Source: Botryllus schlosseri
Lineage: Eukaryota
Length of the DNA: 64,000 nt
Reading direction: 5' to 3'
Assembly: GCA_051294905.1 (NCBI GenBank)
Contig: CM119385.1
Location: 10,540,001 to 10,604,000 of the forward strand
The notes beneath the pieces are model-generated. The model made no database searches. It was given only the letters and a program-made list of their open reading frames with translations, and was not told the DNA's origin. The position numbers and the translations under genes were made by a program. Positions 7,594-35,400 of this stretch are shown here, piece by piece; the first letter of the stretch is position 1, and the number at the start of each line of letters is the position of its first letter.

Positions 7594-7796
7594 TGTGGTG
7601 ATCCGCAATTAAGCAATAATTACTTTCATCTGATTAGTTACGATGTACAGTACAGTGTCGCCTTATCGTTACCGTGTCATTCTATTCTCTTCTGTTCTGC
7701 TGTCGGTTGTGTTTTATGTTGCTTAAAGCCACATTGGTTACCTTTGCTTTAATAAAGCTTCAGTCAGTTATTCAACGCATTAGTCAGTTCACGACA
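7594..7796 (+). repeat. 5' LTR of element 1
   Basis: TGTGGTGA...CACGACA, with AATAAA at 7751. Confidence 0.95.
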
Positions 7797-7815
7797 ATTT
7801 GAGCAACATAGAATT

Positions 7816-9369
7816 ATGGCAGAAAGGATTCTGAAACCAGACAAGCTCGATATCAGTCCGGACTCCGCCTTTGCTGAAAAACAGTATAAGCATTGGAAGA
7901 AGACCTTCGATAATTTTCTTTCATCATTTGATCAAGATACACAAATCGACAAGCTGAAGATCTTAACGAATTTCGTGTCGTCGTCTGTCTATTCCTATTT
8001 TGAAGAAAGTTCGACTTACGATACCGCAATAGCACTTCTCGACAATATTTATATCAAGCAAAAGAACGAAATCTTCGTCCGCCACATGCTAGTAACTCGT
8101 ATTCAGAAGCCCGAAGAGACGATCGAGGAATTTTCCCGCGCCTTGGCAGATCTAGCGAAAGATTGCACATTCAAGACTCTCTCGGCGGAAGATCATCGCA
8201 AGGAGTCCATCCGCGACGCTTTCGTTACTGGTCTCCGATCAAACGTTATCAGACAGAGATTATTAGAAAGTGACGGGGCTGTAACCCGCGAATTGGCGAT
8301 CTCAAAAGCCCGCTCATTAGAATTCGCCCAACGAAGCTCTAGTATCTATTGCAGCACTCCATGTTCATCTGTCGGCGTCGAACCGCTGGAAAAATATTTG
8401 AATCCTGAAGTCGAACTATCATCCGCAGAAACTCACAGTCGACTCAACGCAATGAGCAAAACAATCAAACCTAATCGGAAGTGCTTTTTTTGCGGTCAGT
8501 CATTCCACTCCCGATATAAATGTCCAGCGAAACGGAGCGAGTGTGGCTATTGTGGAGTCCTAGGTCATTATGAAGTGGTTTGCATGAGAAAGGCCACCGA
8601 CAACAGGAGAACAGTAACTGCAATGATCTCATACTTCAGCGCCATCGGAGTACCCAAATGTCTCATAAAAGCAAGAATCGTGGTTAAGATCGGCTGCCAC
8701 ATAACATTTGCTTTAATCGACTCCGGTTCCGCGGAAAGCTTCATAAGCACTGGATACGCCAACGAAATTGACCTGAAATCCACTCCGTACTCCTCTACGG
8801 TTACATTTGCTTCCAAATCACATTCCCGCAAGATTGAAGAACTCTACAGACCGGACATTCTTGTAAACGAAACGAAATATACGGAATTCCCTCTTAAAGG
8901 AATGGAAGATTTGTGCGCTGATGTGGTGCTTGGTCTCGATTTCATGAACTTGCATAAACGAGTCATTTTCAATATGGACGGAGATAGAGATACCTTTGAA
9001 CTCCCTCGAGATCAGAAGTACAGGGTATGCGGAGTTGCTCAAGCGTGTGTCGAAGCACCGCAAATTTTCAAGTTTATGACACCGAATTGTAAACCGATTG
9101 CCACTAAATCCAGAAGATACAGCGAAGCCGATCTACATTTCATTAAAGCGGAAGTTGCGAAACTCGAGAAGGAAGGAATCATCGAGCCGTCCTCATCGCC
9201 TTGGCGAGCACAGGTTCTTGTTGTAAATGACGGTCGACACAAGAAGCGCATGGTCATCGACTTCTCTCAGACGGTCAACAGGTATACCTTACTAGACGCC
9301 TATCCTTTACCAAGGATCGATGACCAAGTCAACAACATCGCCCGTTTCAAAGTTTTTTCAGTACGTTAG
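7816..9369 (+). pseudogene. gag-pol: Element 1 gag-protease-RT N-terminus (fused ORF, ends in a frameshift)
   Basis: Contains a double zinc knuckle (CFFCGQSFH...C, CGYCGVLGHYEVVC), protease LIDSGS and RT SPWRAQVLVV/PLPRIDD. The frame breaks at the T6 run near 9353-9362, within the FSTLDL motif. Confidence 0.93.
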
Positions 9370-9392
9370 ATCTGAAGTCCGCGTATTATCAA

Positions 9393-10382
9393 GTGGCACT
9401 ATCACCTGATGATCGTCCGTATACGGCATTCGAAACCGCTGGAAATCTTTACCAATACCGTCGATTGCCATTTGGAGTCACCAACGGAGTTTCGGCATTT
9501 CAAAGAATAATAGACAACGTCATAAAAGACAACAAGCTCACCGGCACCTTCGCTTATCTGGATAATATTACTGTTTGCGGTATGGATAAGGACGATCACG
9601 ATCGGAATCTCGACGCGTTTCTCAATGCTGCTCAGCGATTCAGCCTCACTTTCAATCATTCGAAGTCGATCATCCGTTCTACGGAAATAGACTTGCTCGG
9701 TTATCGTGTGTCGCATGGCCTGATCAAACCGGACCCAGAAAGACTAAAGCCGTTAATCGATTTATTGCCGCCACGCAACAACCCAGAACTAAAACGAGTG
9801 TGTGGCATGTTTGCCTACTATGCCAAATGGTTGCCCAACTTTTCCGACAAAGTCCGTCCTTTGTATTCAGTCGAAAAATTTCCGCTTTCCGAAAATGCAT
9901 CTATCGCATTTAACGATTTAAAACGCGAGTTAGTTGACGCTTCTCTTGGTAGGATCGACGAGACAAGTCCGTTCACAATAGAGTATGATGCTTCTAATGC
10001 AGCCATTACAGCTATCCTTAGTCAAAACGGTCGACCGGTCGCGTTCATGTCAAAAGCACTATCACCAAGTGAAATACGCTACTCCTCTGTTGAGAAAGAA
10101 GCGTCTTCAATTATCGCGGCAGTTCGTAAATGGGCTCATTTTTTACATGGCAGACATTTCACTCTTGTTACTGACCAGAGATCTGTCGCGTTCATGTTTG
10201 ACGGCAAATCTAAAGGTAAAATAAAAAATACCAAAATCCAGCTGTGGCGTGTCGAACTCGGTCAATTTTCGTATGATATCGTACACAAACCGGGGGCACT
10301 GAATGTTGCGGCTGATATGTTTTCGCGGACCACATCTTCGTATTGCGCATCGATTTCACCCTGTGAGTTGGGTTCTATCTAA
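9393..10382 (+). pseudogene. pol: Element 1 RT and RNase H fragment
   Basis: RT motifs LPFGVTNGVSAFQR and AYLDN; RNase H motifs YDAS, EKE, VTDQ and ADMFSR. Confidence 0.93.
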
Positions 10383-10387
10383 ATCGC

Positions 10388-11485
10388 ATACACGACACTC
10401 TGGGTCATCCAGGAGTCACAAGGCTGCATCATTTCGTTCGTTCGAAAAATCTCTCGTTCTCCCTAAATGACGTCCGTGAGACCTGCGCTCGTTGCCGCAT
10501 TTGTGCTCAAATCAAACCAAATTTTTACAAATGCAATCCGCAAGTGCTTGTGAAAGCAACGAAACCTTGGGAAAGAATCAACGTAGACTTCAAAGGGCCT
10601 TTGAAATCTAACAAATCCCCTTTCATGTTCGTTGTCATAGACGAATATAGTCGTTTTCCGTTCGCCTTTCCATGTCGCAACACTTCCGCGCTAACCGTCG
10701 TTTCGTGTTTGTCGACACTATTCGCTGTTTTTGGACTTCTGGGATACGTTCACAGTGACCGAGGCACCGCTTTCGTGTCCAAGGAAGTCAAGGATTATTT
10801 ACATTCTCGCGGGGTTGCAACTAGCTTCACTACGCCTTACCACCCAACAGGAAATTCGCAGTGCGAACGCCTTAATCGAACATTATGACGAACTATCAAA
10901 CTCATTTTGAAATCAACCGGAGTCTCAGAATCATGTTGGGCTGACGCCCTTCCTCATGCGCTACATTCAGTTCGATCGCTACTTTGCACGTCAACTAATT
11001 CAACACCGCATGACCGATTTTTTTCCTTTCCAAGAAAAAGTATGGTGGGGAATAGCGTGCCATCCTGGCTATTGACACCGGGGCCAGTTTTCTTACGCAA
11101 ATTCGTCAGAAACAAGGGCGACGAACTATGTTCTGAGGTCGAACTTATTGAAGCCAACCCGACTTACGCACGTGTTCGTTTTCCTAACGGCCGCGAGTCC
11201 AACGTCTCACTCAACGATTTGGCCCGTTTTCCTACTGGAGAAGAAACACCGTCGACTAATCCTGAAACGAAACAAGCTGAACCTTGTTCTGTTGATATCG
11301 ATGGCCACGAGCCAAGTCGCGAAGTTTCTAACGTTGAGTTGAAGTCATCTGATGAAGAGCCTCAAGAATCTAACCATTCAGAGGATGTACCAGATGATTC
11401 GAGTAGAAATCTAGACGTCGAGCTTCGGCGTTCAACTAGAGTTAGGCGCCAGCCGGATCGGTATGGTAATTTTGTTAGTCATTGA
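10388..11485 (+). pseudogene. pol: Element 1 integrase with frameshift and internal stop
   Basis: Contains the HHCC region (HDTLGHPG...CRIC), VDFKGP, HSDRG, YHPTGNSQCE and C-terminal LRRSTRVRRQPDRYG. An in-frame TGA at 10886-10888 replaces a Trp codon. Confidence 0.92.
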
Positions 11486-11537
11486 TATTTTTGTGTCATT
11501 TTTATATGTGAATTTACAAAATGCAAGGGGGGTAGAA

Positions 11538-11740
11538 TGTGGTGATCCGCAATTAGGCAATAATTACTTTTCTCTGATTAGTTACGTTGTACAGTACAGT
11601 GTCGCCTTATCGTTATCGTGTCATTCTATTCTCTTCTGTTCTGCTGTCAGTTGTGTTCTATGTTGCTTAAAGCCACATTGGTTACCTTTGCTTTAATAAA
11701 GCTTCCGTTAGTTATTCAACGCAATAGTCAGTTTACGACA
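11538..11740 (+). repeat. 3' LTR of element 1
   Basis: Direct repeat of 7594-7796, about 94.6% identical by manual count. Confidence 0.95.
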
Positions 11741-11885
11741 AAGTGTTAGTATGTGAACGCGGTTATTGTTGGTATTTGAATCGCCGTCTACGCCGGCTCT
11801 GTGGCAAACTAATTACCAAAATATTACCAAGCAAGTGATTCCTAGATTTAGCAAACTATTTCACACCCTTTTTTGCTAAAAGTAC

Positions 11886-26400: not shown

Positions 26401-29400
26401 CTACACTTGGGGGCCATTTAGCGAGTGAGCTCTAGCTTATAAACGCGCGTAGCGACATCTATTGCGTGGGTATAGGGCGTAGGCAGGACCGTAACTGCCG
26501 CACCCCAAACCAAAAAATTAGGTGGGGGCGATCTCGAAGGGATATCAAAATTATTTCGTGAATTATCTTAAATTATAGAGTGTTCCGAATGTTCCTGTCC
26601 GGTCAATCTGAACCCCACAAGACATTGCCATCCCGCAGAGGAAAATTATTTGCCAGTGAAAAAATACCCATTTGAAATCGTATGCATCTTTTAGTTTAGT
26701 ACGCTTATAGGAGATTTCAATATATTTTGAAATAGCAAAAGGTCACGAAATAACATCAGGCAACGGAGTCATTATACGAACGGGTTCGCCCGAAGATGTC
26801 AAATTAGTATTTACGGGCCCTACATTTTCCAACACACCTGACTCAGCTCCACCGGTAAATCTGATTACGTGAGCTGAGAGGATAAAAGATTGATAGCAAT
26901 ATATATGCAATTCCTGATCATGTTGGCCGATTCAACCATGAATTAAAGACAATTACCGTGCTCCGCGCGTTTAGGCGGCAAAAGCTGACTAAACAGTAGG
27001 CCTACAACAAATCTCGCTGATAAGTAGAGGGCAAAACGTATAGTCTGATGGGGGGTCTGGGAGCCAAGCCCCTCACAAGTTTGGTTTATCACCCTATGAG
27101 AGGCCCAAGATCAACGTTTTGGGGACTGACGAAGTGCTATTTCGTTCCTGGGCGTAGGCCTGCAGGATGCGACGAATGTGAGAGTAGCCTACCATTTCCT
27201 TACAGACAATCCCTACTTCACTTCACATTAATTCACCTTCTACATTGTTTTTGGATATTTTTATCTCCTTTTTGATATTCATAAGAGCAGCATAAATGAT
27301 GCGATTCCGATCGCCTAATGTTTAAATATAGGCGAGGCTATGTATAATTCCCCGATTGGTTCCTCCCGAAGCGTACTACAACCACATCACTGGTATACGA
27401 CTATACAGAAGTGAAGCGGCAAACTGAATGTTACACAAATACGAATCAGAAACTCGGAAAATATACCAAGAGCGTATTCACTTAGTGAATGCATATACAG
27501 TTATGCACACATGACTTCACAACTTCGAAATAACGATGGTATAGGCCAGATGCGGCCAACTTCTGCAGTCGGCGGGCCGGATATGAGAAAATGACGTACT
27601 TGGCAGGCCGGATTCTTAAATCGATACATTTAAAGCGTATTCATCTACCTCTTGGATTAATCGTATTTAATGTAAACTTTAAGTTTGAAGACCAAAACAG
27701 AGTATTCAATAAATATAGTAACGTAATTTACTTCAATAGCTGTTGAAGTGGAGTAGACTTCTGTCGTAGATCAAAGTTGTTAACGGGTCCTTTGATCTCT
27801 GGCTGCATGTAGGACACAAAGAAAACAAATCACTAAAGAATAATTAACAATCATTATTATTTTTGTCCGAAAAAAAAGAAAGAATAACTTACTCCCTATA
27901 ATTTGACGTAGTAAGCAAGTAATGTGGAGAATTCCGGCAGACTGTGACCGCGGGCCATAATATGATGTAAGACCAAAAACTGGTTCGGCCGCTCAAAATC
28001 CCTTCGCGGACGTATGTTGCTCGCCGATAAAATGTATTGTATGCCTACGAGGGGTCGAATTTTTTTCAAATTTACCAATATATAGATTCATTAGGACAGA
28101 GTCCACGCATAAATGCCGGTAATGCCCGCATTTTCATGTTGACGAACTTACATGTAAGATCCATGCACTCTCGCACGCTATACGCACATGCACGTTAAAG
28201 AATACCCTACAGTTACCAAAATTTAACGTAGCAATCGGGGATTGCGGCTGACTGTGGCGCGGGAAATATTATCATGTATGATCGGAAAATGTCTGCGGGC
28301 CGGACAAAATCATGTTGCGGGCCGTATGTTGCCCCGTCGCTGGTGTAGGCTATCGTTACATAGGCATACGCCGGTTTAATGGAAGAGACTCTGCCTTCGA
28401 GCTTTGAACAACGTATTACAAAATATTATATTTTATTTTCAGTTCTTCTTACGCAAGTCGAATAAGCAATTTCCAGGTCGGAGATCGGCTATATGTTAAG
28501 GTTAGTAGCCGACTGAAACAAGGGTATAGGTAGGGTTTCATCAGGGATACATAGAACTCCTATATGCTCCAGGGTTACATTCAAAACAAGAGATGTTTTA
28601 AAACATGTTCCAAAACGATGTTTTGAACAAATGCATTTTTATTTCAAAAGTTGTATATGCATAATAATGTCATCACTGTGTAACGACATTCGAAAGACAT
28701 GTATGAGCCTTCGGGCGACTTGCACTAGATATAGTTGGCGTATACGATATGGAATGGGTAGACCTTCGAAATCGTCGTCGGTTCAACAGTTATGCAAGTA
28801 TAGTTATATATATATATAGTATTGGAGCGGACCGCAAATGGCACCTGTGCTGGGGGTTGCCGACCTCAGATATAGAGCGATTCCGATGTTCATCTTTCTA
28901 TGGCTCCGTAATTCCGAGCCTTCCTACAGCAGGCTGCGGCACTACCGGTACTTGCCTAGAGACTAGTTTTGTGGAATTCATATTTGTGCATTGGTGACTT
29001 TGCGGTGTACCATTTCAATTCTCAGATTCTCGGCGATCGCTTTAAGACAATCTTTTGTGGTTTGATGCCTACGGCATAACGATTTTATTTGCCAAATGTG
29101 ATCCCACAATATATAATACGCATACAATTATGATTATGAAAACAGTGCACTGACTATTAAATGCGGGTTATCATGATAACAGTACATCATATTTCAATAA
29201 ATAAATACAGCAACAGCCTTTTGATATATATAAGTAGATAGCAGTGGGTTGCAAAGAGTGCAATCACGCCCCAAATGTTGAAAAAACAAAATTGTGAAAT
29301 CTCGCCCATTCTCAGTAGAAATCACTAACTCTCTGATATTACGTACTTTTAATGATCAATTTGTTCTGGTTGATATGAAACTATCAAACGAATCAAAACT

Positions 29401-32400
29401 AGATGTGGTGATTGTTGTGATTGTATAAGTGCTGATTACTGTAATTAGTTTACTTTGCTCTGTTCATTCCTTTCGTACCTCAGTTGCTTATATCTGTGTT
29501 GTCGAGTGCATGTCCTAGTTCCGTGAAGTTGATTGTAGCTGAATTTCAGTTAATAAAAACCTAGAAAGCTGTCAAGCAGTTTCGTCTTCGTCTACCTACG
29601 CTTTCCTCGAAAGGTCACCACAATTTTATTAACTGCTATTGACACAATCGACTCTGGAATGACTTTCTCTCAAGAGAAGTATATCCGCGTGCCGGTTCTA
29701 GATTTATTACCGAGCTCTCAAGACTCTTCGAAAGTATTCAACCACTGGGACAAAATGTTGTCGAGCTTCATATCGGCTGCAGAGTCTTCTTTGCCATCGA
29801 CCAGCAGCACGGACACTGGACAAGAATCTAGCAGTGGCCGTCCCGGGGCAGTTCTCGATAAGTTGGCTATTTTGATTGGTTATGTATCGCCAAGCGTGTA
29901 CGCTTTGATCGAAGATCATGGCACGTTCGAATCTGCCATGGCACACCTAACCAAGTTATATCGGAAGAAAAAGAACATCACATATGCTCGACATTTACTC
30001 GCAACTGCTAAGCAAGACTCTGGTGAGACCGTCGCTGATTTCTCACAAAAGTTGATGGCTCTGTCTCGTGATTGCGATTTTGAAGCTGTTAATGCAGAAG
30101 TGCATAAAATGGAGGCCGTGCGAGATGCCCTAATTACTGGCTTGCGGTCCTCTGGCATTAGATTGCGTCTTCTCGAACATGATGAGTTGACACTCGAAAA
30201 AGCCATGCAGATAGCAGACTCTCTTGAACGGGCGCAAGCGTTTTCCTCGTCCTATGAAATATCGCCTCCTACCGCTAACATGGTTCCGGGAAATCAGGAA
30301 ATGCAGAAGACTTCACATACGCCTGACCAATCGCCTGTGTTGTCCTGCAGCTCTGAATTGGCTGCATTACAGAAGTCTCCTGAAAAAAAGAAGTGCTTAT
30401 TTTGCGGCGGTTTCCATACGATGCTTCGCAAGTTTTGTCCAGCCCGAAACAGCGAATGCTCGAGATGTGGCCGACGGGGTCACTTTGCCAAAGTCTGCAA
30501 ATTCAATTTGGCTTCGCTAGCCGGTGTACCCGGTTCTTTGAGGCGTTCGTTCGACGTTGGAAGTTTTTGTTGCTGAGAGATTGGTCAAAGTACTTGTAGA
30601 TTCGGGGGCGTACGAATGCTACATTAGATCATCATTCGCCAAAATTCTCAATCTCGCTCTTACTCCTCGGGATTACACTATTACCCTTGCATCAAAGTCA
30701 TCTTCTGCTCGAGTTATTGGTCATACATACGCGACACTTCGCATTGAAGATAAAGATTACGGCGCAACTCAATTTTGCGTCGTTGATGAACTGTGCGCCG
30801 ACGTAATCATCGGTTTGGAATTCCTCCAACAGCATAAGCGAGTTATATTTGAATTTGGTGGGCCTAAGGGAGATCTCGTATTAGGACGCAAGCATTGTGT
30901 CGTAGCTGCCGCTAAAGTGAGTGATCCGCCTGAAATATTCAAGTTTGTCGACCCAGCTGTAAAGCTTGTAGCTGTGAAGTCGAGAAAGTACAGCTCGGAG
31001 GATCGATCTTTTGTACGGAGCGAGGTGTCAAAGCTCCTGGATGAAGGCGTTATAGAGAAGTCGGTATCTCCCTGGCGAGCTCAAGTTTTGGTAACCAAGG
31101 ACCCTCGACATAAGAAAAGGTTAGTGATTGATTACTCGCGGACGATAAATCGATACACCCCTTTGGATGCTTGTCCGCTACCAAAAATTGATGACATTGT
31201 CAATGAAGTTGCAAAAGGTGTTGTTTATAGCACGATCGATCTCAAGTCTGCCTATCACCAGGTGTCTCTCTCTGCGGCCGACCGACCCTTCACAGCTTTT
31301 GAAGCTGATGGTTGTCTGTATCAATTTCGTCGCCTACCCTTCGGCATCACCAATGGGGTCGCTGCATTTCAGCGGTTCATTGATAAATTTATAGCGGACA
31401 ACCACTTGAAAGGCACAATCGCTTACTTGGATAATGTAACTATATACGGAAGGAATCAGAAGGAGCACAATGAGAGGCTCTCTTCGTTCATGTCCGCCGC
31501 TGATTCAACAGGTCTGACTCTAAATAAAAATAAATGTGCGTTTGGGGTTTCGAAGCTCTCACTGCTCGGCCATCTGATCTCCCACAATGATATTCGACCC
31601 GATCCGGATCATTTGCGACCCTTAACGCAAATGCCGGCTCCAAGCGATACTCGTAGTCTGAAGCGCTGTTTGGGCATGTTTTCGTACTATTCAAAATGGA
31701 TTCCGTCTTTTTCCGATAAAGTGAAGCCCCTATGTGAAAATGTCGTGTTCCCCTTGCTTGAAAAACAGAGAAACGCGTTTGAAACGGTAAAACAGAATCT
31801 ACTTCGCGCCTTTTTGAGCTGCATCTATGATGACGAACCGTTTCAAGTTGAATGCGATGCTTCCGAAGTTGCGATCGCCTCTATTTTAAGCCAAAAGGGC
31901 AGGCCTGTTGCGTTCATGTCTCGAACGCTATCAAAATGCGAAATGAAATACCCCGCTGTAGAAAAGGAAGCTTTGGCCATTGTCGAGTCTCTTCGAAATG
32001 AATTTAAATTGATAACGGACCAAAAGGCATTATCTTTCATATTTAGAAAAGACCATCCAAGTAAGATTAAAAATGCAAAGCTCACTCTGTGGAAACTCGA
32101 GTTAAGTCCGCTAAAGTATCAAATAATTCACCGCCCTGGATCCGAGAATATCGGACCTAATACTCTGTCTCGGGTTTGTTGTTCGTCCCCAGGCCAGCCA
32201 CACATGAGCCTTCAAGAGATCCATGAAGCGCTGAGTCACCCTGGGATTCGACGACTTGATCACTTTGTCCGATCCAAGAATCTACCTTTTTCTATGGAGG
32301 ACGTTAAAAGAACTTGCGCTAATTGTCAATTATGTGCTAAATTGAAACCTCGGTTTTTCATGTCTAATGAAACGAACAAGTTGATAAAAGCTACTCGACC

Positions 32401-35400
32401 ATGAGAACGTATTAGCATCGATTTCAAAGGTCCCGTTGATGGACCCAGAAAGTTTGTACTTGTTATTATTGACGAGTACAGTCGCTTCCCATTTGCTTAT
32501 CCTTGTCGCGACATGACGTCGTCAACGGTCGTCAATTGTCTCTCATCCTTGTTTTCGCTTGTCGGTGTACCGGAATATGTACACAGTGACAGGGGTGCCT
32601 CATTTCTATCTAAGGAAATCACCGATTTCTTGACACGCAAGCGTATTGCCACCAGCAAGTCGACTCCTTATCACCCCACAGGCAATTCGCAATGCGAGAG
32701 GCTTAATCAGACTTTGTGGAAATCCGTCAAGTTGCTTTTGGAAAGTCAGAGATTGCCGGAGATACATTGGGAATCGGTTTTGCCGGATGCTCTTCATTCC
32801 ATCCGGTCGCTCTTATGCACGGCATCTAATTGTTCTCCTCATGACAGGTTCTTCAAGTTTGAAAGGAGATCCATGTTGGGCGACTCCATCCCCGACTGGC
32901 TTCTTCATGGCGGCACTGTACTTCTACGAAATTTTGTGCGGAACAAAGGCGACCCCCTCGTTAATGAGGTAGAACTATTGGATGCCAACCCTAAATACGC
33001 CTTAATACGTTACAGAAACGGCGTAGAATCAACGGTTTCCGTTAAAGATCTCGCACCCTACCCTGTTTCTACAAAGTCTTCTGAGGCGCTTGAAAGAAAG
33101 GAAAAAGAGTTTTCCTCTGTCTGCGATACAACGGAGCCGTCTTCCGATGAACTTACCACCTCGTCCAGCAGCGAAAAAGATGGCGTTGCTTGTAAAACAT
33201 GTTCTCCGCGTCGCGACGAAGTAGTGGAGCCCAGTAGCAGCGCAGATGTCGAGGAACCTCCACTGCGTCGATCCACGCGCATAAGGCGCGCTCCCGAACG
33301 TTACGGGCAAGGGACCTCGTAAAAGCCTGTCCCTATTTTTCTTGGTGGGGGTGAATGTGGTGATTGTTGTGATTTTATAAGTGCTGATTACTGTAATTAG
33401 TTTACTTTGCTCTGTTCATTCCTTTCGTACCTCAGTTGCTTATATCTGTGTTGTCGAGTGCATGTCCTAGTTCCGTGAAGTTGATTGTAGCTGAATTTCA
33501 GTTCATAAAAACCTAGAAAGCTGTCAAGCAGTTTCGTCTTCGTCTACCTACGCTTTCCTCGAAAGGTCACCACACTAGATGTTTCCATTTATAGGTAATT
33601 TTTATCTTTGACCTGAAGTAAAACCTCCCGATGCCTCGCGTATACTCTGGTCGTATTAGAGATGAGGAATTCTGCGGCCAGGATCCATGTTTTAGTAAAT
33701 AACCGGAAGTGAGCTATTACATTTCACTGAGAACTGTCGCATGATCAGCTCTGTCATTACTAATTATGATGTTATAGCGCAAATCTGATAAATGAACTTC
33801 TTGATATGCATTGTAAAACAGCAGACTGATTTCAGATGACGATCGATACTAACAGTAACCCAACCCTGTCTCGCGGTTACAAATTGCACCCAGTTAGCTG
33901 CTACGCAGCGCCCGATGGAAGCAAAAATAGTCTACAGCAATACACACTCATAGAAAACGGGTAAGTTGCAATAAAAGCTTTATTAGTTTCTATAACAGGG
34001 GCGGCCAACCCGCGACCTACGAGAAGGTTTTGAGTGGCCCGCGATGTAATTCTCGAAATTAGTTATAATAATAATAAAAAATTACTCAGGCAATTAATTT
34101 ATTGAACTTGCAAGATCAACTAAAAATGTCATTAGCGAACTCTGGAATGCTGATGACTAAAATATCAGTTCCGACGCATTGGTGTAGCCAGTGGCCATCC
34201 ACATTTTTCGGGGATCTTCGTATATGACAGATACGACCACAAAGCAGAATATTTCGCGGCCGATTTATTTGACTTGATATTTTTCTTAGCATTTCGAGCG
34301 ATTTATTGTCACTCGATTTCTTGATTTTAGCATTGGGGCCCCCTCCTGATATTTTAAAACTAGAAATACGCCCAATTTACGGAATTGACTCTAACTATAT
34401 TCGCAATCGTGAGAGAACGTGTCGTCTAACACGCAACTTCGCGTCTGCACTCGCAGAATGATCTTCGGCGATGACACCGTTGCACAAAATGATAGACGCA
34501 TATTCACTGAAATCTTGATATTGATAATATTGATAATATTGATAATATTGATAATATTGATATGTCCAAGCGCCAGTTATTTACCCTGGTCAACAGAATG
34601 AAAAAAACCATCTAGGAGTCGTTTCTGGGGTTTTCAAGGTTGCTGATTACGAATATCCAGCCGTAGATTGGCTCTAGAAAAGAAGACACTTATACCCATA
34701 AAAAAGCCCAAAATCCCTTGAAAATTTCAGTTGGTAGGAGGTAAATCTTAGATTTTTCTACTTTCATACTGCGCATAAATACATAATTGACTAGGAACCC
34801 GCATGTCGTTCTCAGTTATTCCATCAATATTAACATTAACGAGAACTTTGCTTGTAGAAAAAGCAGTTTATCAAGCCTAGAAATTGTACTTTTGCACAGC
34901 GGAAATATGTTTTCTCTAGTGCCAATTGGTCATTCTACCAAGATGAAAGTGGAGTGTAATGCTATCACATTTGTCCCTGGGAAATCTAACTAAAGTACTT
35001 ATATGAGTCTCATCTATTATGACTTGTAAATGGATAATTTTTCGCTGAGCCAACAAAGTGAGTGTACCTAGTCTCTATATCAAACGAGTAGCTTAAATCT
35101 GGTATCTTTGATGGACATCAGATTCGAATACGGATGAAGGATTCCAATTTCATATTAAGAAAGGTGCTCACTGAATGGAATCCCATTTAGGATAATAGTA
35201 AATAAAAACTTTTTGGAAGATCACAAAGCACCCAGCCACAAACAGCTGGTCCAAAAATTGGTATCTGCATATGGAAACCTTGGAGCAAACATGAGCATTA
35301 AATCTCAGTTCCTGATCAGTCACCTTGATATATTACCTGATAATATTGTTGATTAGAGGGAATAGAAAGGGGAAAGGTTTCATCAATACATCAAAACAAC

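What the first reader, a model, noticed from the sequence alone, without database searches (positions are those of the whole stretch)
29527..29653. Element 2 independently shows LTR/post-LTR complementarity that covers the poly(A) signal
Seen: there is no TGG PBS. TTTTATTAACTG (29624-29635) pairs perfectly with LTR CAGTTAATAAAA (29547-29558), and ACAATCGACT (29644-29653) pairs with AGTTGATTGT (29527-29536, one G:U). An Inr-like TCAGTT (29546-29551) would start the RNA at A29548, so its first 11 nt would pair with the PBS position, as in Tf1. The sequences differ entirely from element 1 while the geometry is kept, which amounts to covariation between families. Inference: a self-priming structure that may also hide the 5' AATAAA from premature polyadenylation.
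Basis: partly seen in the sequence, partly recalled or inferred. Interest (0 to 1): 0.85.

Follow-up and report, generated by a model that had tools for sequence, protein, structure and literature searches.

The report
Self-primer hairpin in gypsy retrotransposon LTR
The 12 bases just after this retrotransposon's left repeat pair perfectly with its own poly(A)-signal region, and the same compensated pairing recurs in relatives across animal phyla, so this group probably primes DNA copying with its own RNA rather than a tRNA.

Summary
Element 2 is a 4.2-kb Ty3/gypsy-type LTR retrotransposon at 29404-33574. Its LTR segment 29547-29558 contains the LTR's only AATAAA. That segment is the perfect complement of 29624-29635, which starts one base after the LTR end, exactly where a primer-binding site sits.

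The same geometry occurs in every related element I could delimit:
- 10 families in this genome.
- Mytilus, Xenia, Apostichopus, Biomphalaria and Cydia.
- Two circular Logan contig families, plus one Logan contig with unverified LTR bounds.
- 25 of 29 metagenome loci that have a repeat pair.

The geometry is LTR ...CA, one spacer A, then 11-19 bases complementary to an LTR segment ending ...TAAA before GCC or ACC. About 36 different stems were seen. Positions 1-11 are Watson-Crick in 15 of 15 delimited elements, with 2-4 pair types at most positions. Five sister-family pairs show clean double substitutions.

Best reading: Tf1-like self-primed reverse transcription in a metazoan-wide gypsy clade without a chromodomain (mostly YxDN reverse transcriptase).

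Not shown:
- The transcription start; the only RNA data were 3'-end reads.
- The poly(A)-masking idea. Five of the 17 elements tabulated keep the signal outside the stem.

Other first-stage notes flag similar elements elsewhere in this genome.

The parts
29399..29403 (+). Target-site duplication CTAGA, left copy; the right copy is at 33575-33579
   Evidence: the same 5 bases flank both LTRs.
29404..29622 (+). 5' LTR, 219 bp, TGTGG...CCACA
   Evidence: 217 of 219 bases identical to 33356-33574.
29547..29558 (+). LTR arm of the duplex (CAGTTAATAAAA), the proposed self-primer; its 3' end is followed by ACC
   Evidence: perfect complement of 29624-29635. It is in the minimum-free-energy fold. The homologous arm in about 36 other stems ends ...TAAA before GCC or ACC.
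29552..29557 (+). AATAAA, the only poly(A) hexamer of the LTR, lying inside the LTR arm
   Evidence: single hexamer; sense-strand 3'-end single-cell reads cover the LTR and fall to near zero after the bin ending at 29593.
29623..29623 (+). One-base spacer (A) between the LTR end (CA) and the paired segment
   Evidence: a 1-nt spacer in 14 of 15 delimited elements, 2 nt in Mytilus.
29624..29635 (+). Post-LTR arm (TTTTATTAACTG), at the primer-binding-site position
   Evidence: perfect complement of the LTR arm and unchanged across the family's copies apart from single-copy mutations.
29527..29536 (+).
   Evidence: P about 0.05, absent from the other families. (broken in the diverged subfamily).
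29659..30576 (+). gag ORF with two zinc knuckles. In this copy it is out of frame with pol, because this copy has 4 extra letters near 30544 compared with other copies.
   Evidence: table 4; other copies have one uninterrupted 1200-1270 aa frame.
30557..32404 (+). Protease, reverse transcriptase (AYLDN motif), RNase H and integrase zinc domain; ends at an in-frame stop in this copy
32513..33322 (+). Integrase core and C-terminal tail; no chromodomain
33344..33355 (+). Polypurine tract GGTGGGGGTGAA
   Evidence: analogous G-rich tracts precede every 3' LTR examined.
33356..33574 (+). 3' LTR. Its copy of the arm (33499-33510) has a private A-to-C change at 33504, inside the AATAAA.
   Evidence: all other copies have A at that position.

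Best explanation
Element 2 belongs to a compact (about 4 kb), single-ORF, chromodomain-less Ty3/gypsy clade found across Metazoa. This clade appears to start minus-strand DNA synthesis with a piece of its own RNA instead of a tRNA.

Proposed mechanism:
1. The element RNA starts at or a few bases upstream of 29547/29548. This is inferred.
2. Its first 11-16 bases, which in most families include the AAUAAA, fold back over a 22-70 nt R-U5 loop. They pair with the sequence that begins one base after the LTR. The pairing is shown by conservation and covariation.
3. As in Tf1, the element's RNase H would cut after the last paired A, between 29558 and 29559 before the conserved GCC/ACC. The new 3'-OH would be extended through the spacer A and U5. 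This is inferred by analogy.
4. Plus-strand synthesis copies the primer back into the primer-binding site each cycle. This would keep arm and site perfectly matched and explains the paired substitutions between sister families.

The same AATAAA in the 3' LTR directs polyadenylation about 15-35 nt downstream, which is consistent with the 3'-end reads.
For: 1. Position. The duplex starts 1 nt (once 2 nt) after the LTR end in 15 of 15 elements with delimited LTRs. Stem lengths are 11-17 nt, against a null maximum of 8-10. This is where the primer terminus must lie.
2. Covariation. Positions 1-11 are Watson-Crick in 15 of 15, with 2-4 pair types at positions 3-12. Sliding the partner by 1-3 columns drops pairing to 25-43%.
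3. Clean double substitutions between close relatives: L069/L078 G-C to C-G; element 1 family/L050; L096/L088, L085/L095 and L113/L123.
4. Breadth. 10 families in this genome. Mytilus, Xenia, Apostichopus, Biomphalaria and Cydia. Two circular Logan contig families and one Logan contig with unverified LTR bounds. 25 of 29 metagenome loci with a repeat pair. About 36 distinct stems of 11-19 bp.
5. No shared host primer is possible. Sites differ between families of one genome and each matches only its own LTR. None begins with TGG.
6. Folding. The stem is in the minimum-free-energy structure of 29547-29640 (-17.8 kcal/mol, z = -2.6).
7. A conserved Y-A-G-T-T at stem positions 12 to 8 resembles an initiator at a fixed 11 nt from the cut site, the same primer length as Tf1 (Tf1 facts from PMC7175516).
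8. The clade is active. Many copies have identical LTRs and uninterrupted 1200-1270 aa frames.
Against: - No 5'-end data. The only RNA reads that mapped are 3'-end single-cell reads, and many of them come from other copies. So it is not shown that the LTR arm is present at the 5' end of the RNA.
- If transcription started at the conserved GCC/ACC just after the arm, the arm would be U3-only and the Tf1 scheme would not apply as written.
- Pairing usually extends beyond the Inr-like A, which a fixed 11-nt primer does not explain.
- RNase H cleavage of an RNA duplex is assumed from Tf1, not tested.
- Host tRNAs could not be fetched for a direct complementarity screen.
Confidence: 0.72

Rival explanations
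1. The LTR arm lies in U3 only, with transcription starting at the conserved GCC/ACC right after it. The pairing would then be a long-range or intermolecular contact between the 3' U3 end and the post-LTR site of the genomic RNA. It could cyclise or dimerise the RNA, or prime from a cut 3' copy in trans.
For: GCC or ACC directly after the arm is almost invariant. In the shortest LTR tails (L073 21 nt, Xenia 24 nt from arm to LTR end) R would be short under either model. No 5'-end data exclude this.
Against: The A before GCC breaks the usual pyrimidine-purine initiator rule. By contrast, Y-A-G-T-T at the arm's 5' part fits an initiator. A local hairpin with a 22-70 nt loop is physically far more favourable than a 4-kb contact. 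There is no precedent for it, whereas Tf1-type priming from the 5' end is established (PMC7175516, PMC4600332).
Confidence: 0.13
2. The hairpin is only a regulatory or packaging structure (masking the cap-proximal AAUAAA, a U5 stem, or a dimerisation or encapsidation signal). Reverse transcription would be primed by a host RNA that has not been identified.
For: The stem covers the AATAAA in 12 of the 17 elements tabulated. Retroviral leaders do carry such hairpins (established knowledge, for example the HIV-1 poly(A) hairpin).
Against: The duplex begins exactly 1 nt from the LTR end, which is the hallmark of the primer terminus. The sites are family-specific and have no TGG, so no common tRNA fits. 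In 5 of the 17 elements the poly(A) hexamer is outside the stem, yet the pairing is kept.
Confidence: 0.1
3. Chance complementarity in AT-rich sequence, or a tRNA primer that was overlooked.
For: The arm is 83% A+T. The host tRNA set could not be screened.
Against: The null maximum is 8-10 nt against 11-19 observed, at a fixed position, in more than 40 elements and with compensatory changes.
Confidence: 0.02

Closest known systems
Tf1/Tf2 of Schizosaccharomyces pombe and the Tf1/sushi group of self-priming chromoviruses (Tj1, Maggy, Skippy, Cft-1, Boty, sushi; predicted for plant Tcn1)
   Same: The site directly after the 5' LTR is complementary to a segment of the element's own LTR rather than to a tRNA. 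The shared core is 11 bp, the length of the Tf1 primer. Intact copies have a single gag-pol frame. (PMC7175516, PMC4600332, PMC6934838, PMC6317226.)
   Different: No integrase chromodomain. Hosts are invertebrate animals of many phyla. The primer arm usually contains the poly(A) signal and always ends in AAA before GCC/ACC. Most members have YxDN instead of YxDD in the reverse transcriptase. The transcription start and the RNase H cut are not demonstrated here.
CsRn1 clade of metazoan gypsy elements (CsRn1, PwRn1, Kabuki)
   Same: Invertebrate hosts, small size, and an LTR that starts TGTGGYG (PMC3601003).
   Different: CsRn1-type elements have a tRNA-Trp site, 4-bp target duplications and a CHCC gag motif (PMC2582038). 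Here there is no TGG site, the duplications are 5 bp, and the zinc knuckles are of the CCHC type.
Mag lineage, especially the SURL-like 'C-clade' of metazoan gypsy elements
   Same: Wide metazoan distribution, short LTRs (145-260 bp), one gag-pol frame, and two zinc knuckles in gag (PMC6238403, PMC2577118, PMC3601003).
   Different: Membership was not tested, because no reference sequences were available to the tools. I found no report of self-priming for this lineage in the searchable library.
tRNA-primed retroviruses with the poly(A) signal in R (for example HIV-1)
   Same: AAUAAA is present at both RNA ends, and a 5' hairpin covers it.
   Different: Those viruses use a tRNA primer, and the hairpin is not the primer.

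Membership tests
Self-priming LTR retrotransposons (Tf1-type mechanism) | The sequence at the primer-binding-site position is complementary to the element's own LTR, not to a tRNA 3' end | tested here: met
   12 of 12 bases pair, starting 1 nt after the LTR; there is no adjacent TGG.
Self-priming LTR retrotransposons (Tf1-type mechanism) | Complementarity is kept in relatives through compensatory change | tested here: met
Self-priming LTR retrotransposons (Tf1-type mechanism) | The complementary LTR segment is the 5' end of the element's mRNA | tested here: inconclusive
   One search gave only 3'-end reads. There is an Inr-like motif at a fixed 11 nt, but pairing often extends further 5'.
Self-priming LTR retrotransposons (Tf1-type mechanism) | RNase H cuts the RNA duplex to release the primer, and strong-stop DNA carries that RNA | not testable with these tools
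   Needs biochemistry or mapping of cDNA intermediates.
Tf1/sushi group (chromoviruses) | Chromodomain at the integrase C-terminus | tested here: not met
   no PF00385 hit even at E <= 1, in window copies and in Mytilus, Biomphalaria and Cydia homologs.
Tf1/sushi group (chromoviruses) | Phylogenetic placement of RT/RNase H/integrase within the group | not tested
   No named reference sequences could be obtained. Sources name the homologs after Drosophila 17.6/opus, not Tf2, which is weak evidence only.
CsRn1 clade | tRNA-Trp primer-binding site, 4-bp target duplication, CHCC gag motif | tested here: not met
Mag lineage / SURL-like C-clade | Placement in the pol tree; two CCHC arrays in gag; short LTRs | tested here: inconclusive
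   The two knuckles and short LTRs are present. No tree with reference sequences was built.
Ty3/gypsy (Metaviridae) LTR retrotransposons | Domain order PR-RT-RNaseH-IN, LTRs with TG..CA ends, target duplication, polypurine tract | tested here: met
   (best solved relative is the Ty3 reverse transcriptase, E = 1e-43).

The most novel reading that the evidence does not exclude
A very abundant gypsy clade found across animal phyla has abandoned tRNA priming. One 11-16 nt stretch would serve at once as initiator-proximal 5' end, poly(A) signal and self-primer. Its pairing with the primer-binding site would be renewed every replication cycle. Such elements would be invisible to tRNA-based PBS annotation. 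They would also be immune to host defences that target tRNA primer-binding sites with tRNA fragments. If it has not been reported, this extends self-priming from fungal and vertebrate chromoviruses to a major invertebrate lineage.
Probability: 0.45. Interest if true: 0.75.

Novelty: new variant of a known kind. Interest (0 to 1): 0.66.

Why it matters
- Self-primed reverse transcription is documented for Tf1/sushi-type chromoviruses and predicted for a few plant lineages. Here the same solution appears in a different gypsy clade. That clade is one of the most numerous repeats of this genome (2564 first-look candidates) and occurs in cnidarians, molluscs, echinoderms, insects and other animals.
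- Annotation pipelines that look for tRNA-complementary sites will mislabel or miss these elements.
- The finding gives a simple sequence rule for recognising them: LTR..CA, A, then the complement of an LTR segment ending TAAA before GCC.
- It predicts an exact primer, cut site and R region that can be tested with routine 5'/3'-end mapping.
- By established knowledge (Schorn and Martienssen), tRNA-fragment defences act on tRNA primer-binding sites. If so, self-priming would be an escape route, which could help explain the clade's success.

Tried and rejected
- RNA evidence for the start site. One bulk RNA run had no reads on the element. Two single-cell runs gave only sense 3'-end reads, many from other copies (loose ends at 29403 and 32416). 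No start or end pile-ups were reported.
- The start of an X1 contig at 29541 looked like a possible 5' end. It coincides exactly with the 30-mer shared between two subfamilies, so it is an assembly-graph break, and X1 may be DNA.
- Circular 3746-nt Logan contigs are collapsed LTR-plus-internal assemblies and say nothing about RNA ends.
- One metagenome contig (L120) starts 2 nt upstream of its stem. This is an anecdote only.
- tRNA screen. No tRNA lies in the window or in the 351 kb I held.
- Second helix: rejected.
- TATA box at a fixed distance from the arm: none found. Reading the AATAAA as a TATA box is excluded where the arm is only 21-24 nt from the LTR end (L073, Xenia).
- Rfam: no match in 29350-29750.
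- Loci that were unusable for LTR definition: Styela L061 (tandem array), Trichinella L067 (contig end), L068 (window too narrow; refetched as L076).
- Older SURL, mag and Tf1 papers are not held in the library.
- Saci2-like tapeworm elements are described with 4-bp duplications and tRNA sites, so they appear to be a different group.

Full report
**What is there**

The window holds two related LTR retrotransposons.

Element 2 spans 29404-33574.
- It has 219-bp LTRs that differ at two bases, TGTGG..CCACA ends, a 5-bp target duplication (CTAGA) and a polypurine tract at 33344-33355.
- Its ORFs carry gag with two zinc knuckles, then protease, reverse transcriptase, RNase H and integrase in the Ty3/gypsy order. 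The Ty3 reverse transcriptase is the closest solved structure.
- This copy is damaged. It has four extra letters near 30544 relative to other copies, which separates gag from pol. It also has an in-frame stop at 32402-32404.
- Many other copies in the genome have one uninterrupted frame of 1200-1270 residues and identical LTRs.

**The observation**

- 29547-29558 (CAGTTAATAAAA) is the exact reverse complement of 29624-29635.
- The LTR ends at 29622, so the paired segment starts after a single spacer A. That is where a primer-binding site lies.
- The AATAAA at 29552-29557 is the only poly(A) hexamer in the LTR.
- No TGG is adjacent to the LTR.
- Among about 500 internal 20-nt windows of the same element, none has more than 8 complementary bases in the LTR.
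- The stem is part of the minimum-free-energy fold of 29547-29640 (-17.8 kcal/mol, z = -2.6).
- In 27 genomic 5' LTR copies both arms are unchanged apart from private mutations. This holds even in a subfamily whose LTR is only 83-85% identical.

**The second helix**

It is broken without compensation in that diverged subfamily. It is marginal against shuffles (P about 0.05) and has no counterpart in other families. I treat it as chance.

**Comparative test within this genome**

- *Element 1 family.* Typical copies pair 16 of 16 (LTR TTCTATGTTGCTTAAA with post-LTR TTTAAGCAACATAGAA), again after a one-base spacer. A relative 80% identical (L050) has a C-to-G change in the LTR arm matched by G-to-C in the other arm. 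The window's own element 1 copy has two private changes, both giving G:U pairs.
- *Other families.* A profile of the pol protein finds 2564 first-look candidates in this genome. Eight further families fetched from it all show the same thing, with stems of 12-16 bp.
- *A sister pair.* L069 and L078 are close relatives whose arms differ by G/C, and the post-LTR arms differ by C/G.

**Comparative test in other animals**

- Homologs 45-53% identical occur in tunicate, mussel, soft coral, moths, sea cucumber, snail, nematode and trematodes.
- All five foreign elements with clean LTRs have the pairing. The stems are Mytilus 16 bp, Xenia 14, Apostichopus 12, Biomphalaria 16-17 and Cydia 11.
- Two circular Logan contig families also have it, with stems of 13 and 12 bp. 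One further Logan contig has 11 bp but unverified LTR bounds.
- In 80 metagenome loci, 29 have a repeat pair. Of these, 25 show an 11-19 bp stem in the expected place, 2 are atypical or partial, and 2 are contig-end artefacts.
- A scan that does not depend on LTR boundaries finds such hairpins about eleven times more densely in the 650-nt window upstream of pol than elsewhere.
- Altogether about 36 different stems were seen.

**Covariation**

I anchored the pairs at the LTR-proximal end.
- Positions 1-11 are Watson-Crick in 15 of 15 delimited elements.
- Positions 3-12 each show two to four pair types.
- Pairing then decays: 14, 12, 12, 10, 8, 6 and 2 of 15 at positions 12-18.
- Sliding the partner by one to three columns gives 25-43% pairing.
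- These stems were chosen as best complements, so pairing inside each stem is by construction. The informative facts are the fixed position, the lengths far above the null, and the paired substitutions between close relatives.

**Mechanism**

- The start of the duplex one base from the LTR end marks the primer terminus. That boundary is where minus-strand synthesis begins.
- The sites differ between families living in the same genome. Each matches only its own LTR and none starts with TGG. A shared host tRNA is therefore excluded on sequence grounds.
- The only known mechanism that fits is Tf1-type self-priming. [quoted passage not shown]
- The invariant core here is also 11 bp. Its 5' part carries a conserved Y-A-G-T-T resembling an initiator.
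- Against a strict 11-nt primer, most stems continue 1-8 bases further 5'. The start is therefore probably at or a few bases upstream of the stem edge, or dispersed.
- Copying of the primer into the site during plus-strand synthesis would explain why arm and site stay perfectly matched.
- These steps are inferred. Only the pairing, its position and its evolution are shown.

**Poly(A)**

- Sense-strand 3'-end single-cell reads cover the LTR and drop to near zero after the bin ending at 29593.
- This fits use of the 29552 AATAAA, with cleavage some 15-35 nt downstream.
- The stem contains the hexamer in 12 of the 17 elements tabulated. In the element 1 family, L072, Mytilus and Apostichopus it lies 3-23 nt downstream of the stem, and the L164 family has no standard hexamer in the stem.
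- Masking the cap-proximal signal may be a side benefit. It is not the conserved reason for the pairing.

**Main open alternative**

Transcription might start at the nearly invariant GCC/ACC just after the arm. The arm would then be U3-only and the pairing a long-range or intermolecular contact. The initiator-like motif, the local hairpin energetics and the Tf1 precedent argue against this, but no 5'-end data exclude it.

**Classification**

- The clade lacks the integrase chromodomain that marks Tf1/sushi chromoviruses.
- It differs from the CsRn1 clade, which has a tRNA-Trp site, 4-bp duplications and a CHCC gag motif.
- It resembles descriptions of the Mag lineage or SURL-like C-clade in its short LTRs, two knuckles, single frame and wide metazoan range. 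No reference tree could be built, so this stays a lead.
- I found no report of self-priming for such elements in the searchable library. Older subscription papers on SURL and mag were not available.

**Handling**

Copies were only compared and described.

Noticed in passing
window 31421-31435 (AYLDN) and homologs P0001-P0120: The reverse-transcriptase active-site motif is YxDN rather than YxDD in 75 of 97 homologs with a recognisable motif; 22 have YxDD. Families with identical LTRs and intact frames carry N, so the N form seems to be active. The self-primer stem occurs with both forms (Cydia and Apostichopus are YLDD).
   Followed up: partly
window 7594-11741 (element 1); arms 7712-7727 and 7798-7813: Element 1 has the same geometry. 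Family copies pair 16 of 16. The window copy has two private changes (7714 and 7801), both giving G:U pairs.
   Followed up: yes
window 33504: The 3' LTR of element 2 has a private A-to-C change that turns its AATAAA into CATAAA. All other copies examined have A at this position.
   Followed up: yes
window 29403/29404 and 32416 (reads of runs X23, X24): Single-cell reads join the LTR start to a foreign upstream sequence (22 and 10 reads). They also join position 32416 to unrelated sequence ending in an A run (45 and 16 reads). Other copies (a solo or 5' LTR, and a truncated copy) are therefore embedded in polyadenylated host transcripts elsewhere in the genome.
   Followed up: no
C-termini of integrase, window 33260-33310 and 11420-11480: Both elements end with a conserved basic motif (RRSTR.RR.P.RYG) after an acidic, serine-rich tail. 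No Pfam family matches it.
   Followed up: no
L164-L166 (three Logan runs): The same 3746-nt element is assembled as a circle, permuted differently in three runs, with 30-nt end overlaps. This is a collapsed LTR-plus-internal assembly; one-LTR circles cannot be told apart from it.
   Followed up: partly
G000 contig C3, about 34488000-34508000: A dense cluster of more than 20 tRNA genes scoring identically lies within 20 kb (Rfam tRNA search).
   Followed up: no
L061 (Styela clava): The closest named homolog lies in a tandem array with a 5.5-kb period (4.3 kb repeated at 97%), not in a simple LTR-flanked copy.
   Followed up: no
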